A stretch of 64,000 bases of DNA from Octopus bimaculoides (taxonomy: Eukaryota), in contig NC_068997.1 in NCBI RefSeq assembly GCF_001194135.2, positions 46,853,054-46,917,053 on the forward strand. The letters are read 5' to 3'. Below are positions 274 through 15,867 of this stretch, in pieces; within the stretch, counting starts at the first letter, position 1, and every line of letters begins with the position of its first letter. A model generated the notes under the pieces. It had not been told where the DNA came from, made no database searches, and worked only from the letters and a program-made list of their open reading frames with translations. Made by a program: the position numbers and the translations under genes.

Positions 274-505
274 TGATTTTTTTTATTAGGCATAAAGCCC
301 TAAACATAGATGGGGACACCACAAGGACAGACAAGACCACAGTGGGGAGAAAAAACATAAAACGAATGTAAATGAAATGAAAGTTATATAAAAATGAAAA
401 TGGACGCATGGGCTCCCCTCCCATGCAGTACCATTTGAACCGTTATATGTACTATTTACAATTGTTCTCTTTTTTTCCCTTTAATTTCATACTTTTTTTT
501 TGTCT

Positions 506-847
506 TTAGTAGACCTTCATTAGTGGTTCGATATCTCTTAAATCCACCCCTGGTGGCAACTCTTTAAATTCCACCTCCACTCCTGGCGGCTCAACGTTAT
601 CTCCACACATCTCTTTCAATTTTCTGTAGTTTTCCTCTTCTATCAATACTGCCTTCATATCCTCTGCGTAGACGTATGAAAGCCCCTTCACTCTTACTAT
701 TGAGTGTAGCTTGATTATTTTTTTCTCTGTTTCAACATTTTTTGGATACGTTACATTATACCATACTCCTTCTCCTCCTCGTATCTTCTTTCCTTTCTCT
801 TGGACTTTTGGTTCTCTCTTTTCTTCCTCCATAAATAGTCTCTCCAT
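506..847 (-). CDS. 113-aa ORF in the ORF1-only element (frameshifted ORF1 C-terminus or small second ORF)
   Basis: Open frame of non-repetitive composition. The ending VEVEFKELPPGVDLRDIEPLMKVY loosely resembles an RRM start (inference). No APE or RT motifs. Confidence 0.35.
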   Translation of the reverse strand: MERLFMEEEKREPKVQEKGKKIRGGEGVWYNVTYPKNVETEKKIIKLHSIVRVKGLSYVYAEDMKAVLIEEENYRKLKEMCGDNVEPPGVEVEFKELPPGVDLRDIEPLMKVY

Positions 848-919
848 CTCACCTCCATACAGTTAGGTTTCCCACACTTTCTTTTTCCTTCCTACTGCCT
901 TCCTTCGCAGTTTCTTTTC

Positions 920-1802
920 TCATCTCTTCTCTCTTCTTTTTCTGCTTCCTCCGCTCCTCCTTCTTTTCTTTTTAACCATAGTGAATCCATTCTCCGTTTC
1001 TTTGTCTGTTGCCTTGTCCTGTACTACCTGGTCCACCCTCTCCTGTCTCTCCTCCTGTTCCGTTTGCGGCTTTCTTTGGGTGCACCATGCCTTCATGTGG
1101 CCCCTTTCTCCACATGTGAAACACAATGGCGGCCTACCCTCCACAATAACTCTCAGCTTCACATCTTCCGGCAGCACAATCTCATCCACCACGCTATTCA
1201 AGTCCTCCGTTGTTGCCTGAATCGTTAATTCGATACCATATCCGCAGTAGTTCACCTTCTGGGTCCTTGTAGCCTTCAGAATCTTCCCATCTTTCATATT
1301 ATATATTACGGCTGTCGTCAGCCATTCTTTCAATTCGGGTGGTACCTTACCCATTCGCACCTTGGCCACACGTTTGCCGCAGTACGAAGGCAAGAGCACC
1401 CATTCCTCTGTCCTTATTGCCTCTGTGGAGTGCTTTATTGCTTCCTCCTCCGTTGTGAAGCGCACCTCTACAGTGGCGTATCTTCTCTCTCTCGTGATGT
1501 ATGTTGTGAATCTTTTTATATTCTTAACACATTCCTCTATGGCCTCTATTGGTGCGATTTCTATCTTTCTCGTGCGTGGCTGCCTTCATGGTTTTAAATA
1601 TAACCGTTCTTTTTGTCACGTTCGCCGATAGCTCTTCAAGCGGTGTCAGCTTCAAAGAGTTTCCTTCCTTTGTGATTAATTTCTCACTCTTTTTCATCTT
1701 TCTAGGCTCCACTTTTATCTCGCGGACCTCCAACTCGCGCGCATCTACTCCTTTGCCCGTTGCGGCTGCCTAACTTGGGTTTGCTTCCGGCGCCTTCTCC
1801 AT
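920..1802 (-). pseudogene. Disrupted LINE ORF1 (gag-like nucleic-acid-binding protein)
   Basis: ATG at 1802 gives MEKAPEANPS*AAATG (TAG at 1770-1772 inside a PSYAAA-like motif). One frameshift near 1570, then ...VIVEGRPPLCFTCGERGHMKAWC (CX2CX4HX4C) and a basic tail KKKRRRSGGSRKRREKR, with TGA at 920-922. Confidence 0.8.
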
Positions 1803-1942
1803 TTTCCCCACAATGGGAAACAAAACAACAATTAACGAATCAACAAAGGCAACAATTCCATAAATAGTTCAACATAGACTCACGCAACAACTTCACAGTG
1901 ACGGGACACCGCTAAGCAGTTCGCCCGGCGTGCTAACGTTTC

Positions 1943-2181
1943 TTATTTCTTTACTGCCCACAAGGGGCTACACATAGAGGGGACAAACAAGGACAGCCAA
2001 ACAGATTAAGTCGATTATATCGACCCCAGTGCGTAACTGGCACTTATTTAATCGAACCCGAAAAGTTGAAAAGTAAAGTCGACCTCGGCGGAATCTGAAC
2101 TCAGAACGTAACGGCAGACGAACTACTGTTAAGCATTTCGCGCGGCGCGACGTGCTAACGTTTCTGCCAGCTCGCCGCTTT
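1943..2181 (-). mobile_element. Full-length SINE-A1, head-to-tail with the interrupted copy
   Basis: Head GCGGCGAGCTGGCAGAAACGTTAGCACG, B-box-like GTTCAGATTCC, tail GTCCTTGTTTGTCCCCTCTATGTGTAGCCCCTTGTGGGCAGTAAAGAAATAA. Confidence 0.9.
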
Positions 2182-12938: not shown

Positions 12939-12975
<37 letters not shown>

Positions 12976-13022
12976 TTACATGGATACGTACGTACGTACA
13001 TACATACATACATACATACATA
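12663..13022. repeat. Compound tetranucleotide microsatellite (TATC)n-(TGTC)n-(TCCG)n-(TGCC)n-(TACA)n
   Basis: Directly visible. Confidence 0.95.
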
Positions 13023-13534
13023 CATGTGAAAATATGTGGCCTAGTGGTTAGGGCGTTGCACTCACGATCACTAGATCGTAGGTTCGATTCCCGGACCGGC
13101 TGGAGCATTGTGTTCTTAAGCAAAACACTTCATTTGAAGTTCCCCTGCGATCCTGTCGACATGAAAATTAACCATGTTGTTGTAGTAACAACGTGTACTT
13201 AAGTGTGTGTATGTGTGTGTGTGTGTGTGCGTGTGTGCGTGTGTGCGTGTCTAGGTTAACAAATTCAGTACAATTTACGTGATAGGCGAATGCTCTCCCT
13301 TAGTTAAAACGTATATCAAGTATACTAAGCTATAGCGTTATTCGTTGAATACCCAAATATCTTTTCGGTTCTTACAACAATTTATTCAACGAATAAAATG
13401 TGTAGAGTTCAAAATTTCAAAACACTCAATCCTATTCCTCCAACATACGTCGCCCTTTTTAAAATTTAAACTCTAGTTTTGTACATTTTCTTGCCAGTTC
13501 TCCTGCCCTCGATGGTCTAAGACACGCACACGAA

Positions 13535-13772
13535 AAGGCGGCGAGCTGGCAGAAACGTTAGCACGCCGGGCGAAATGCTCAGCGGTATTTCGTCTACCGC
13601 TACGTTCTGAGTTCAAATTCCGCCGAGGTCGACTCTGCCTTTCATCCTTTCGGGGTCGATTAAATAAGTACCAGTTACGCACTGGGGTCGCTATAATCGA
13701 CTTAACCCGTTTGTCTGTCCTTGTTTGTCCCCTCTGTGTGTGCCCCCCCCCCTCGGGGGCAGCAAAGAAATA
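13535..13772 (+). mobile_element. Full-length SINE-A1
   Basis: AAGGCGGCGAGCTGGCAGAAACG...GAGTTCAAATTCC...GTCTGTCCTTGTTTGTCCCCTC...TGCCCCC-CCCCCTC-GGGGGCA-GCAAAGAAATAA. Confidence 0.9.
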
Positions 13773-14949
13773 ACACAAACTTCGTATATCTCGAAGTATT
13801 CAGAGTCATTGCAGATTGTTACAAAGGCGCGACAAAGAGGCGAAAAGACTTTAACTAGAGAAGGAGATTTTTCTTACGAGCTCAACCGAATCTTTGGATC
13901 AATTTCCCTGAAAAGCGATCCGAAGATTCGATTGACTGGTGTTTGAAAGCCTTAAAATGTTGACCAAAGAATACAAATTTAAGAGAGGGACATCTGAGTT
14001 GTGAGGCTTTCGTTTCTAGAATAATGTCGGCCAGTGTTAAGACATGAAACTACTTAAAAATTATCTACCGGACTTGGCTTTATCACAAATCAGGAACGAA
14101 TGATGTTTATTATTATGATATCGTAACTGATTAGAGAAGCGGACACAGAGCAGGAAACTATTTCAGCAGATATTTCTCGTGATTGTTGCTACATAGTATA
14201 CACATGGTCGAAAAAACAGAAGTAAAAATGTCCAGCAAGGGAGGTGAATATTCGTTAGTATTAAAAGAAAAGTAAAAAAAAAAGAGGCTATGTTTATCGT
14301 GCGTGCAAATCACGTAATGTATCTTCAGGATACCATAATAAAGCAGGTGATAAACCAATCTGCAGCGAATTAATAACTTCAGCTTGATTAAGTCTTTCAG
14401 TTTTTATTGGGACAGCTCTTGTTTCGTGCTCTCGTTAATATTGTAATTAACAATCAATCAACGCAAGCTTTAATTGACAGTGGAAGCAGTGACAGCGACA
14501 TTGCAGTCGATATTGTTCTGTAGAATGGTTTTGTCATCTGCAAAACATTCAGTGGTAACGTTATCAGTACAACTTAATTCTGCGACCACAGAAATATGTA
14601 AAGTTGACATTCAATATGCCGAAAAGATGTTCAACAGCAATAACTGTCTTTGAGCTTAGGTCAGTCTCGAGCCCGTGAACTTATAAGGTCTGCACTTAAC
14701 CCGGCTCCCATGGCGTATGAAGGACTGAAATTACATTCCTTCTCACTGAATGGCACGCTGCTCCATCTCATGGCTGCACAATTACTGGTGATTGGTTTGG
14801 AGCAACGTGAAATGAAGTGTTTTGTTCCAGAGTACAACTCGCCCCTCGGTCCGGGAATCGAAACCATTATCTTACGCTCGTCAGTGTGTGTGTGTCTATG
14901 TGTGGCTATGTGCTACAAAAGGAATATCCACAAAGCCAGATTATTAATG

Positions 14950-15867
14950 TATCGTCATGTGCTCACCGCTCTCTACCAGTCGAGCAATACGGTCGGTGGA
15001 AGTTGCAGGGTAGAGCGATGACATTCTTGGTGAAACTCTAGGCATTAAGGAGAATGAACTAGCTGGTCTATTTCGGAGGACTTTCGGGCCCGGTCGGTAC
15101 TACCATGGATAACTTCCAGAAGTCTCTGGCCTGACAGTGCTATCGAAGAACACTGTCAATTTGAGATAAACTCTACAAGCATGGAAGCCATGTCAGACGA
15201 GACTGTCCGAGATGCGAGCTGAGCGACGAAAGTGTTCTGCATGCACTCGTGCAGTGTTCGAATACTGCTCACTTCTGGAGTTATGTCGAACAACTGTTAT
15301 CGCGTGAATCCGATAATCGACCGTATCCATCGTGAGGATCGCCCCCACCGTCCACGATTACAAGGCAAGACAGGCAGTGTTCTTATGTCCAGTGGTTACG
15401 GTGAAAGAGGTTGTGTAGTGGACGAGGCTGACAAGATTGAGGAAAGATACTTTCCTCTTCAGTGAAGCCCCTATCAACTTTTCTAAGTTCCATTTGGAAA
15501 GGAGAATGAGGGTGGAGAGAGAAGAGCTACCTCCCAGTGAATTTGTGAAAAGTTGGGTGACTATGGCAAAAATGCTTAGAGTGAATGATCCATCTCGAAT
15601 TACGCACCTGTTGATTGACGGACAGGAGAGAGGTGGTCAGGATAATCCTGAGCCTGTGGGGTTCCTTGGTTGGCCCCAGTTAGAGTTTTTCCTGTAACAG
15701 GAGGACTGCATCATTCATATTATCACACACTTTGTATACTATTAATATTTACATCGTATTTCATCGTCTTTCTATTTCTTTCACCCCATCCTTTGTGTAA
15801 ATCCACTCACAAATTGTTGTCTATCCTTGTGATGTCTCCCTTATCTATGCCCGTGTGGCTAATAAAA
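14950..15867 (+). mobile_element. Tx1/L1-type LINE, 3' end of ORF2 (zf-RVT region) plus 3' UTR
   Basis: MDNFQKSLA*QCYRRTLSI*DKLYKHG...DCPRCELSDESVLHALVQCSNTAHFWSYVEQLL (CX2C..E..H..C..W at ~15204-15280). 3' UTR ends GGCTAATAAAA and is followed by (TTA)n. Confidence 0.8.

What the first reader, a model, noticed from the sequence alone, without database searches (positions are those of the whole stretch)
274..15867. Three-partner retroposon system: Tx1/L1 LINE, ORF1-only element and SINE-A1 share one structured 3' tail
Seen in sequence, three tails align over ~50 nt. ORF1-only element (minus, 334 to 277): TTGTCTGTCCTTGTGGTGTCCCCATCTATGTTTAG-GGC-TTTAT-GCC-TAATAAAA. Tx1/L1 ORF2 fragment (15817-15867): TTGTCTATCCTTGTGATGTCTCCCTTATCTAT-GCC-CGTGT-GGC-TAATAAAA. 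SINE-A1 (minus, ~2000 to 1943): GGCTGTCCTTGTTTGTCCCCTCTATGTGTA-GCCC-CTTGT-GGGC-AGTAAAGAAA. The terminal stem keeps pairing and a 5-nt loop while its sequence flips (GGC/GCC, GCC/GGC, GCCC/GGGC), and the copy at 13741-13761 extends it to TGCCCCC/GGGGGCA. Established: SINEs borrow LINE 3' tails that the RT recognises (stringent type, classic for CR1/L2/RTE), whereas mammalian L1 recognises only poly(A). Inference: a Tx1/L1-type RT here uses stem-loop recognition and mobilises both an abundant SINE and an ORF1-only parasite.
Basis: partly seen in the sequence, partly recalled or inferred. Interest (0 to 1): 0.85.

Follow-up and report, generated by a model that had tools for sequence, protein, structure and literature searches.

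The report
Octopus LINE, half-LINE and SINE share tail
In this octopus-type genome an L1-like jumping gene, a shortened relative that keeps only its first gene, and a short SINE all end in the same ~50-base tail with a small conserved RNA hairpin. This is the usual sign that the two smaller elements borrow the large one's copying enzyme, and it is rarely documented for L1-type elements in animals.

Summary
No assembly gap touches any of the elements.

Independent copies show that the tail belongs to each family and is not a local chimera:
- ORF1-only copies in Octopus bimaculoides and O. sinensis keep it.
- LINE copies in Argonauta hians and in one metagenome contig (L007) keep it complete; two other metagenome copies keep it only in part.
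- Two Argonauta SINE families carry it, with about 19 copies in 27 kb.

The LINE has an APE endonuclease, a reverse transcriptase and a zf-RVT domain, and is closest to human L1 ORF2p. Its own ORF1 is homologous to that of the ORF1-only element.

The 3-4 bp GC hairpin, usually with a CTTGT loop, shows compensatory changes at all four pairs.

That the reverse transcriptase recognises the tail is inferred, not shown. The parts of this kind of system are all known already: stringent SINE/LINE tails, stringent L1-clade elements in plants, and HAL1-like ORF1-only elements. I rate it a new member of a known kind, of moderate interest.

The parts
14930..15600 (+). 5'-truncated, decayed ORF2 C-terminal fragment of an L1/Tx1-type LINE (zf-RVT domain; frameshifts and stops).
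   Evidence: Pfam zf-RVT, E 2.3e-6. tblastn of P0001/P0010 matches 15002-15595. The start near 14930 is read by eye from frame 2.
15601..15867 (+). LINE 3' UTR ending in the shared tail (15817-15867).
   Evidence: Collinear with the 3' UTRs of LINE copies L006, L007 and L008. The tail is 60-72% identical between genera, against 26-43% for the upstream 3' UTR.
15849..15859 (+). LINE terminal hairpin GCC-CGTGT-GGC, immediately before TAATAAAAG.
   Evidence: (-3.0 kcal/mol).
15869..15936 (+). (TTA)n run at the LINE 3' end.
   Evidence: The same repeat follows the tail in L007 (at least 28 units) and L006 (4 units).
277..1899 (-). ORF1-only non-autonomous LINE derivative, 1623 bp. It sits inside a SINE copy and is flanked by a probable 13-16 bp target-site duplication.
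   Evidence: SINE positions 12-55 lie at 1943->1900 and positions ~40-200 at 276->120. No ORF2 is present here or in the copies in L003 and L004.
506..1802 (-). ORF1 of about 430 aa (one frameshift, three in-frame stops) with a CCHC zinc knuckle, homologous to the LINE's ORF1.
   Evidence: Pfam zf-CCHC, E 3e-4. BLASTP against Argonauta LINE ORF1: 30% identity over 208 aa, E 5e-29. Octopus homologs P0002-P0006.
277..334 (-). ORF1-only shared tail: box TTGTCTGTCCTTGTGGTGTCCCCATCTATGT, hairpin GGC-TTTAT-GCC (299->289), then TAATAAAAAAAA.
   Evidence: -5.7 kcal/mol.
1943..2176 (-). Full-length SINE copy with the LINE-type (A1) tail; hairpin GCCC-CTTGT-GGGC at 1968->1956.
   Evidence: -6.6 kcal/mol.
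13540..13775 (+). Second SINE copy with the A1 tail; stem extended to TGCCCCC/GGGGGCA (13741-13761) by a run of 10 C.
   Evidence: -15.5 kcal/mol.
120..276 (-). 3' part of the SINE copy split by the ORF1-only insertion. It has the A1 tail box, but the hairpin is replaced by a (CAGA)-like microsatellite.
1900..1943 (-). 5' part (SINE positions 12-55) of the same split SINE copy, directly abutting the tail of the SINE at 1943-2176.

Best explanation
**What it is**

The window holds dead copies of a three-level retroposon system found in octopods.

- **Driver.** An L1-superclade LINE, of the kind annotated L1-Tx1 in octopus genomes. Its ORF1 has an RNA-binding-type region and a CCHC knuckle. Its ORF2 has an APE endonuclease, a reverse transcriptase and a zf-RVT domain.
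- **Its 3' end.** The last ~50-60 nt of the LINE RNA form a conserved module. It consists of a pyrimidine-rich box (TGTCYRTCCTTGT..GTCCCCTCTATGT), a 3-4 bp G/C hairpin with a 5-nt Y-rich loop (consensus CTTGT), AAUAAA(A)GAAAU, and often (UUA)n.
- **Passengers.** Two non-autonomous families carry the same module. One is a HAL1-like element that keeps ORF1 and the 3' UTR but has no ORF2. The other is a subfamily of the abundant octopus SINE that swapped its usual tail for the LINE tail.

**How it most likely works (inferred)**

The LINE's ORF2 protein starts target-primed reverse transcription on RNAs that present this module. This is "stringent" recognition: the stem is read as a structure and the loop and flanks as sequence, as shown experimentally for L2-clade LINEs. 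The SINE and the ORF1-only element would then be copied in trans.

**Shown here**
- The tails are homologous and end together at the 3' ends.
- The tail is conserved at family level across genera.
- The hairpin covaries.
- The two ORF1s are homologous.
- The ORF1-only element lacks ORF2.

**Inferred**
- The reverse transcriptase binds the tail.
- This particular LINE lineage drives both passengers.
For: **The tails are homologous and co-terminal**
- (z 4.3 to 8.5 against shuffles).

**The tail is a family trait, not a local chimera**
- ORF1-only copies in O. sinensis (L003 11243-11300) and O. bimaculoides (L004 9681-9738) keep the 3' UTR, box, hairpin and AATAAAG, and have no ORF2.
- LINE copies in Argonauta (L006, L005) and in metagenome contig L007 end in GCC-CTTGT-GGC-(T/C)AATAAAAGAAAT (L005 has the variant AGCC-AGGT-GGCT); L008 keeps only a partial, decayed stem.
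- The tail is the best-conserved part of the LINE 3' UTR: 60-72% identity against 26-43% upstream.

**The same tail serves other passengers**
- In 27 kb of Argonauta DNA, 19 more tails sit on two SINE families and one LINE 3' fragment.

**The LINE is L1-type**
-.
- L1-Tx1 is the only L1-like class among the recently active LINE families listed for O. vulgaris (PMC13282606 Table 1).

**The ORF1-only element derives from this kind of LINE**
- Its ORF1 aligns collinearly with the LINE ORF1, E 5e-29.

**The hairpin is a conserved structure**
- 96.2% of cells are paired, against 70% when shuffled (0 of 500 reach it) and 27-52% in slid registers.
- All 4 pairs show changes on both sides. Covariation score is 0.696 against 0.207.
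- RNAalifold predicts the same helix on its own.

**Precedent**
- Stem read generically and loop read specifically by ORF2 of stringent LINEs (PMC4176376).
- Stringent L1-clade LINE/SINE pairs with compensatory stems in plants (PMC3472496, PMC3747384).
Against: - No functional data exist. The hairpin is small (-3 to -6.6 kcal/mol).
- I chose and trimmed the covariation set knowing the stem. I left out one broken SINE copy, one decayed LINE copy, and three tails with 4- or 6-nt loops (these three still pair).
- The set mixes two tail classes, and some variants are shared by descent. I estimate about 4-5 independent compensatory events.
- Among 19 Argonauta tails selected by a downstream anchor, 7 have uncompensated stem changes. 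This is expected of dead copies, but it adds no covariation.
- One related LINE copy (L009) keeps the box but has no hairpin.
- The ORF1-only hairpins have the G-C middle pair and different loops (TTTAT, CATGGT, CGTAGT), unlike the LINE's.
- AAUAAA right after the hairpin could mean the module serves 3'-end formation.
- Only one decayed LINE fragment lies in the window, and no intact Octopus LINE copy was recovered.
Confidence: 0.6

Rival explanations
1. Shared descent without recognition. The ORF1-only element kept the LINE 3' UTR because it is a deletion derivative, and the SINE picked up a LINE end by template switching. The reverse transcriptase itself is relaxed and needs only the A-rich or (UUA)n end. 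Under this view the hairpin plus AAUAAA serves transcript 3'-end formation or RNA stability.
For: AATAAA or AGTAAA follows the hairpin directly in the LINE, ORF1-only and SINE-A1 tails. L009 lacks the hairpin while still having a long ORF. Tx1-Mar mobilises SINEU in crocodilians without any shared tail (PMC4494074).
Against: Pol III-type SINEs do not need a poly(A) signal, yet at least three SINE families in two genera carry the module. The tail is the most conserved part of the LINE 3' UTR across genera. The stem covaries. Repeated, independent capture of the same 50 nt by different SINE heads is the classic mark of stringent recognition (PMC3747384).
Confidence: 0.2
2. Right mechanism, different driver. 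The ORF1-only family and the window's main SINE subfamily, both with the GGC..GCC hairpin, are mobilised by a second L1/Tx1 lineage whose tail has that variant. The LINE lineage seen at 14930-15936 would then drive only SINE-A1.
For: The hairpin middle pair is G-C in all three ORF1-only copies and in the main SINE tails. It is C-G in all the LINE copies related to the window fragment and in SINE-A1. A more distant LINE (L010, 41% identical ORF2) has CCCC-GGC-CTTGT-GCC-AAA in its 3' region, and so does an adjacent SINE.
Against: Upstream of the hairpin, the ORF1-only tail box matches the class-I LINE and SINE-A1 box closely (z 8.1-8.5). It does not match the main-SINE tail. If the stem is read as a structure, as in ZfL2 (PMC4176376), either variant would serve. 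The source organism of L010 is unknown.
Confidence: 0.3
3. Chance similarity of T/C/G-rich low-complexity ends, or a local chimera in which SINE tails happen to have inserted next to unrelated elements.
For: The tails are pyrimidine-rich and short. The window is dense with microsatellites and nested SINEs.
Against: Dinucleotide-shuffle tests reject chance. The same tail is found on independent copies of each family in other loci, species and genera. The LINE 3' UTR is collinear up to the tail.
Confidence: 0.02

Closest known systems
Stringent-type SINE/LINE tail partnerships (for example UnaL2/UnaSINE1 and ZfL2 in fish; tortoise Pol III SINE/CR1)
   Same: The SINE 3' end is homologous to the LINE 3' end. 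There is a short terminal stem-loop with compensatory changes, followed by short tandem repeats. Several SINE families share one LINE tail.
   Different: Those LINEs belong to the L2, CR1 and RTE clades. This one is L1-superclade. The hairpin here is very short (3-4 bp) and is followed by an AAUAAA-like box. No assay exists for this system.
Stringent L1-clade LINE/SINE pairs in plants and a green alga (LINE1-1_ZM with ZmSINE2/3; L1-1_CR with SINEX-3_CR) (PMC3472496, PMC3747384)
   Same: An L1-clade LINE whose conserved 3' end forms a hairpin with compensatory mutations and is shared with tRNA-type SINEs.
   Different: Those are in plants and algae, this is in an animal (cephalopod). [quoted passage not shown] Here the LINE often ends in (TTA)n, and there is an ORF1-only partner as well.
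HAL1 (half-L1), Ag-Sponge and HeT-A: ORF1-only non-autonomous LINEs (PMC5786205)
   Same: Encodes only an ORF1 protein homologous to that of an autonomous LINE. It has no reverse transcriptase, is retroposed with a target-site duplication, and is multi-copy.
   Different: HAL1 derives from mammalian L1, with a coiled-coil/RRM/CTD ORF1 and a poly(A) end. This element has a CCHC-knuckle ORF1 with an extra C-terminal region and carries the structured LINE tail.
Tx1-Mar / SINEU in crocodilians (PMC4494074)
   Same: A Tx1-group LINE inferred to mobilise a SINE in an animal.
   Different: That partnership was inferred from a shared insertion target. SINEU ends in poly(A), and no LINE shares its 3' terminus. 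Here the link is a shared structured tail, and no target preference was seen.

Membership tests
Stringent-type SINE/LINE shared-tail partnership | The SINE 3' tail is homologous to, and ends together with, the 3' end of a LINE. | tested here: met
   Window SINE-A1 vs window LINE: z 4.3. Window SINE-A1 vs Argonauta LINE L006: z 8.1, 47 nt.
Stringent-type SINE/LINE shared-tail partnership | The tail is conserved among LINE copies and lineages more than the rest of the 3' UTR. | tested here: met
   60-72% against 26-43% identity. Exceptions: L008 is decayed and L009 has no hairpin.
Stringent-type SINE/LINE shared-tail partnership | A 3' stem-loop supported by compensatory substitutions. | tested here: met
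   4 of 4 pairs covary, 96% of cells paired. Caveats: I selected the set, and the stem is short.
Stringent-type SINE/LINE shared-tail partnership | The 3' tail is required for retrotransposition and is bound by the ORF2 protein. | not testable with these tools
   Needs a reporter assay and RNA-binding assays.
L1 superclade LINE (L1/Tx1) | ORF2 with an N-terminal APE-type endonuclease, a reverse transcriptase and a C-terminal Cys-rich (zf-RVT) domain. | tested here: met
   The window fragment has zf-RVT only. The full-length relative L005 has Exo_endo_phos, RVT_1 and zf-RVT.
L1 superclade LINE (L1/Tx1) | The RT and EN are closest to L1 ORF2p rather than to other LINE clades. | tested here: met
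   PDB search. RT: human L1 ORF2p E 4e-13 against R2 E 7e-3. EN: every hit is an L1 endonuclease or an engineered L1 endonuclease loop variant, E 5e-6 and weaker. Only clades with solved structures could compete.
Tx1 clade specifically | Placement inside the Tx1 group in an RT phylogeny with reference elements. | not tested
   No reference Tx1 or L1 sequences were available. Indirect only: L1-Tx1 is the only L1-like class listed among the recently active LINE families of O. vulgaris (PMC13282606 Table 1).
Tx1 clade specifically | Sequence-specific insertion target (typical of many Tx1 families). | tested here: inconclusive
   The flanks of the few copies differ. (TTA)n follows the 3' end in 3 LINE copies but is not seen at the 5' junctions, so it looks like a terminal repeat rather than a target. 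There are too few copies to decide.
HAL1-like ORF1-only non-autonomous LINE | Encodes an ORF1 homologous to an autonomous LINE's ORF1 and lacks ORF2. | tested here: met
   (E 5e-29). ORF1 is followed directly by the 3' UTR and tail in the window, L003 and L004 copy A.
HAL1-like ORF1-only non-autonomous LINE | A discrete retroposed unit with a target-site duplication, present as a multi-copy family. | tested here: met
   The insert splits a SINE, with SINE positions ~40-55 duplicated (imperfect). There are at least 5 copies in 3 assemblies.
HAL1 proper | Derived from mammalian L1 with a Transposase_22-type ORF1. | tested here: not met
   Pfam finds only zf-CCHC and no Transposase_22. It is an analogue of HAL1, not a member.
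tRNA-derived SINE | [quoted passage not shown] | tested here: inconclusive
   ARAGORN and Rfam make no tRNA call on the Octopus SINE heads. A B-box-like GTTCAAATTCC is visible by eye. The short Argonauta SINE has a plainly tRNA-like head.

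The most novel reading that the evidence does not exclude
Cephalopod L1/Tx1-type LINEs use stringent, hairpin-based template recognition. The recognised module (a short GC stem, a CTTGT loop and an A-rich box) would be old and shared by at least two diverged LINE lineages and many SINE families across octopods, and possibly beyond. 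This would be a first well-supported animal case of an L1-superclade LINE with tail-sharing SINEs and an ORF1-only hyperparasite. It would support the idea that stringent recognition was ancestral in the L1 clade and that mammalian L1 relaxed it.
Probability: 0.45. Interest if true: 0.6.

Novelty: new member of a known kind. Interest (0 to 1): 0.5.

Why it matters
- **Octopus genome biology.** SINEs make up roughly a tenth of octopus genomes (11.6% in O. vulgaris, PMC13282606). They are discussed as drivers of genome reshuffling and of neural expression. Yet the papers I could search name no LINE partner for them. A defined tail module links specific SINE subfamilies and an ORF1-only family to L1-Tx1-type LINEs, and so says which reverse transcriptase to blame for their spread.
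- **L1 evolution.** SINEs with L1-clade tails are very rare: three were known in 2012, all in plants or algae (PMC3472496). An animal example bears on whether sequence-specific 3' recognition was the ancestral state of the L1 clade.
- **A testable system.** The module is small and covarying, which makes stem, loop and compensatory mutants easy to design for a retrotransposition assay.

Tried and rejected
- **Public-collection scans found nothing.** I scanned metagenome contigs and viral contigs for relatives of the ORF2 C-terminus, and metagenome contigs for the exact LINE tail.
- **The first homology search was thin.** The decayed window ORF2 fragment gave a single hit. A profile made with that hit was needed to reach the Argonauta copies.
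- **No other copy of this LINE's ORF2** lies in the window or in the three Octopus loci. The Octopus LINE is therefore represented by one dead fragment.
- **P0011 is not on record** for contig look-up.
- **L010**, a 41%-identical LINE, is too distant to align tail to tail. I kept it only as a side lead.
- **MAFFT put tails with 4- or 6-nt loops out of register**. I restricted the pair count to the 13 tails with 5-nt loops and checked the other three by eye and with RNAfold.
- **No RNA-family calls.** ARAGORN found no tRNA. Rfam gave only sub-threshold hits, most of them miRNA-family matches in microsatellite-like sequence.
- **Target-site duplication of the LINE fragment.** I looked for one around 14930-15936 by eye and found none.
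- **(TTA)n as an insertion target** in the Tx1 style. I considered this and set it aside, because the repeat is seen only at the 3' side.
- **Local chimera.** Rejected on the evidence of independent copies.

Full report
**1. The observation**

The quoted sequences are all present at the stated places.

| Tail | Position | Sequence |
|---|---|---|
| ORF1-only element | minus 334->277 | TTGTCTGTCCTTGTGGTGTCCCCATCTATGTTTAG-GGC-TTTAT-GCC-TAATAAAAAAAA |
| ORF2 fragment | plus 15817-15867 | TTGTCTATCCTTGTGATGTCTCCCTTATCTAT-GCC-CGTGT-GGC-TAATAAAAG, then (TTA)~22 |
| SINE copy | minus 2000->1943 | TTGGCTGTCCTTGTTTGTCCCCTCTATGTGTA-GCCC-CTTGT-GGGC-AGTAAAGAAATAA |
| SINE copy | plus 13711-13775 | same box; stem TGCCCCC/GGGGGCA around a run of 10 C |

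- Pairwise local alignments confine the similarity to the last ~50 nt, and it ends together at the 3' ends.
- Against 1000 dinucleotide shuffles the scores are z 8.1 (LINE vs ORF1-only), z 8.5 (ORF1-only vs SINE) and z 4.3 (LINE vs SINE).
- The gaps named by the scan's program lie outside every element. The elements are independent insertions, so continuity across the gaps is irrelevant to the claim.

**2. What the three elements are**

*SINE.*
- blastn finds 17 SINE-derived matches, about 16 copies, in the 64 kb window. Only three carry this "A1" tail: 2176->1943, 13540-13775 and 276->120. The last has lost its hairpin.
- The rest share the head and body but end in a different tail...CCCCTCCCCGAAATTGC-TGGC-CTTGT-GCCA-AAATTTGAAACCAATATT.
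- ARAGORN and Rfam do not call a tRNA in the heads.

*ORF1-only element.*
- It is a discrete 1623-bp insert (1899->277) that splits a SINE copy. SINE positions 12-55 lie 5' of it and positions ~40-200 lie 3' of it. This gives a probable, imperfect 13-16 bp target-site duplication.
- It encodes one ORF of about 430 aa, broken by one frameshift and three stops, with a CCHC zinc knuckle.
- Its closest proteins are uncharacterised proteins of Octopus bimaculoides and O. sinensis, at 61-79% identity.
- The genomic copies behind them (L002, L003, L004) are 68-77% identical at DNA level. In L003 and in L004 copy A, ORF1 runs straight into the same ~230-nt 3' UTR and tail. No ORF2 of this LINE family lies within 10 kb; the only RT-like match is a weak one 7 kb upstream in L004, on the other strand.
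- Being ORF1-only is therefore a family trait.

*LINE fragment.*
- It spans ~14930-15600 and has a zf-RVT domain.
- A profile search found relatives in Argonauta hians and in several metagenome contigs.
- Locus L005 (Argonauta) holds an almost intact element:
  - ORF1, 476 aa, with a CCHC knuckle.
  - ORF2 with Exo_endo_phos, RVT_1 and zf-RVT.
- Among solved structures, the RT of the closest relative (metagenome contig L001) matches human L1 ORF2p best (E 4e-13, against 7e-3 for R2). The L005 endonuclease matches only L1 endonuclease and engineered variants of it.
- The ORF1-only protein aligns collinearly with this LINE's ORF1. Identity is 30% over 208 aa, E 5e-29, with the knuckles in register.
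- I could not run a phylogeny against Tx1 and L1 references, so "Tx1" remains a label. It rests on the fact that L1-Tx1 is the only L1-like class listed among the recently active LINE families of O. vulgaris (PMC13282606 Table 1).

**3. The tail is a family feature of the LINE**

- L006 (Argonauta) ends ...TCGTCCCCTCTATGTTTTT-GCC-CTTGT-GGC-TAATAAAAGAAATAA(TTA)4.
- L007 (metagenome) ends ...GG-GCC-CTTGT-GGC-CAATAAAAGAAATCA(TTA)n.
- L005 ends ...A-GCC-AGGT-GGC-TAAGAAAGAAAT.
- L008 is decayed and keeps a partial stem.
- The 3' UTRs are collinear from the stop codon to the tail. The last 30 or so codons of the window's apparent ORF2 are in fact homologous to 3' UTR.
- The tail is the best-conserved part of the 3' UTR:

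| Pair | Tail identity | Upstream 3' UTR identity |
|---|---|---|
| Window vs L006 | 72% | 26% |
| L006 vs L007 | 70% | 40% |

- The Argonauta LINE tail matches the window's SINE-A1 tail over 47 nt, z 8.1.
- One related copy, L009, keeps the TGTGTCCTTGT box but has no hairpin.

**4. The same tail serves other passengers**

- I searched the 27 kb of Argonauta DNA with an anchor placed downstream of the hairpin. This found 19 further tails with the consensus G-GCC-CTTGT-GGC-TAATAGAGAAATC.
- They sit on three kinds of element:
  - a SINE with the same body as the Octopus SINE;
  - a short SINE with a clearly tRNA-like head, partly in tandem arrays;
  - a 300-nt LINE 3' fragment.
- Repeated capture of one LINE end by different SINE heads is the classic sign of stringent recognition (PMC3747384).

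**5. The hairpin**

- MFE folds give the same helix in nearly all tails, at -3 to -6.6 kcal/mol. The C-run copy reaches -15.5.
- Read outward from the loop, the four pairs are:

| Pair | Usual state | Variants |
|---|---|---|
| 1 (closing) | C-G | U-A in two SINE copies |
| 2 | C-G in the LINEs and SINE-A1 | G-C in all ORF1-only copies and the main SINE subfamily; G-U in two SINE copies |
| 3 | G-C | C-G in SINE-A1 |
| 4 | variable | U-A, A-U, G-C, G-U or U·U |

- On a gap-free alignment of the 13 tails with 5-nt loops:
  - 96.2% of cells pair, against 70% in shuffles (0 of 500 reach it) and 27-52% in slid registers;
  - all four pairs show changes on both sides;
  - the covariation score is 0.696 against 0.207.
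- RNAalifold predicts the same helix without being told.
- Caveats:
  - I picked and trimmed the set knowing the stem.
  - Some variants are shared by descent. I count about 4-5 independent events.
  - One broken SINE copy and decayed L008 were left out.
  - 7 of the 19 Argonauta copies carry uncompensated hits, as dead copies should.
- The loop CTTGT is kept while the stem letters change. This matches what was shown for ZfL2, where ORF2 reads the stem as a shape and the loop as sequence (PMC4176376).

**6. Mechanism**

- The best-supported reading is a stringent-type system.
  - The LINE's ORF2 protein starts reverse transcription on RNAs that present the box, the hairpin and the A-rich module. 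(UUA)n probably arises by slippage at the end.
  - The SINE-A1 subfamily and the ORF1-only element present the same module and are copied in trans.
  - The ORF1-only element may also supply ORF1 protein, as proposed for HAL1, HeT-A and Ag-Sponge (PMC5786205).
- Homology, family-level conservation, covariation and the absence of ORF2 are shown.
- Binding by the RT, and the identity of the driving lineage, are inferred.
- Two rivals remain open:
  - the module serves 3'-end formation and is merely inherited;
  - a second LINE lineage with the GGC..GCC variant drives the ORF1-only element and the main SINE.

**7. Comparison with what is known, and novelty**

- Each ingredient is known:
  - shared SINE/LINE tails with stem-loops (L2, CR1, RTE);
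  - stringent L1-clade LINEs with SINE partners and compensatory stems in maize and Chlamydomonas (PMC3472496);
  - ORF1-only LINE derivatives;
  - Tx1-driven SINEs in crocodilians, but without a shared tail (PMC4494074);
  - recently active L1-Tx1 LINEs in Octopus (PMC13282606).
- I did not find an animal L1/Tx1-type LINE described as sharing a structured tail with SINEs. I also found no named LINE partner for octopus SINEs.
- I could search only open-access text. Repbase and Dfam entries were not available to me.
- I therefore rate this a new member of a known kind, of moderate interest to transposon specialists and to people working on cephalopod genomes.

Noticed in passing
window 17161-17220, 20348-20389, 21271-21334, 23116-23181 (-), 23345-23411 (-), 37831-37897 (-), 56717-56754, ~63845-63890: The main SINE subfamily has a different tail: CCCCTCCCCGAAATTGC-TGGC-CTTGT-GCCA-AAATTTGAAACC. 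It has the same loop and geometry but a G-C middle pair. It also has a lower stem AAAUU/AAUUU, which makes a longer two-part hairpin. Two copies have the compensated variant TGGT/ACCA and one has AGGC/GCCT.
   Followed up: partly
L010 5375-5409 and 5790-5825: A more distant L1-type LINE (P0016, 41% identical ORF2, unknown organism, ENA contig) has CCCC-GGC-CTTGT-GCC-AAA about 650 nt after its stop codon. An adjacent SINE-like repeat carries the same motif, and both end in ATATTTACCCCTCAAAATC. This resembles the Octopus main SINE tail (blastn E 0.004) and may mark that SINE's partner lineage.
   Followed up: partly
L005 and L006 (Argonauta hians), e.g. L006 1019-1350, L005 9629-11300: About 19 copies of the LINE-type tail lie in 27 kb, on two SINE families. 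One shares its body with the Octopus SINE. The other is short, has a clear tRNA-like head, and forms head-to-tail arrays next to an (ATT)n run.
   Followed up: partly
window 15869-15936; L007 2021-2105; L006 7193-7204; window ~16960-17030: The LINE 3' end is followed by (TTA)n of variable length (about 22, at least 28, and 4 units). One SINE copy (16755-16917) is also followed by (ATT)n. This looks like a terminal slippage repeat rather than poly(A). The ORF1-only element ends in A8 instead.
   Followed up: partly
L004 8475-10386: Two ORF1-only copies lie head to tail. The second starts about 110 nt after the tail of the first.
   Followed up: no
window 1900-2176: A SINE copy truncated at position 12 abuts the A-rich end of a full SINE copy, and was later split by the ORF1-only insertion. 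This makes a three-deep nest.
   Followed up: yes
L009 1120-1150: A LINE copy with a 294-aa open C-terminal ORF keeps the TGTGTCCTTGT box but goes straight to AAAAGAAAAA with no hairpin. This is a counter-example to the hairpin being universal.
   Followed up: no
window 5700-5775 (-): A tail-like fragment, GATTTGTCCTTGTTTTGTCCTGTCCGTCTTTGTATCGTC, with no recognisable hairpin or element body. It may be a decayed tail.
   Followed up: no
protein P0011: A C-terminal ORF2 fragment of this cephalopod-type LINE is deposited as a protein of a Herbaspirillum metagenome-assembled genome. That is almost certainly host-DNA contamination of the bin.
   Followed up: no
window 3173-17742, many sites: Most of the sub-threshold Rfam hits (mir-297, mir-466, mir-3149, mir-1277, sno_ZL1) lie in stretches that look like microsatellites (repeat-like ORF translations) and look like composition artefacts; none reaches its family's gathering score.
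   Followed up: yes
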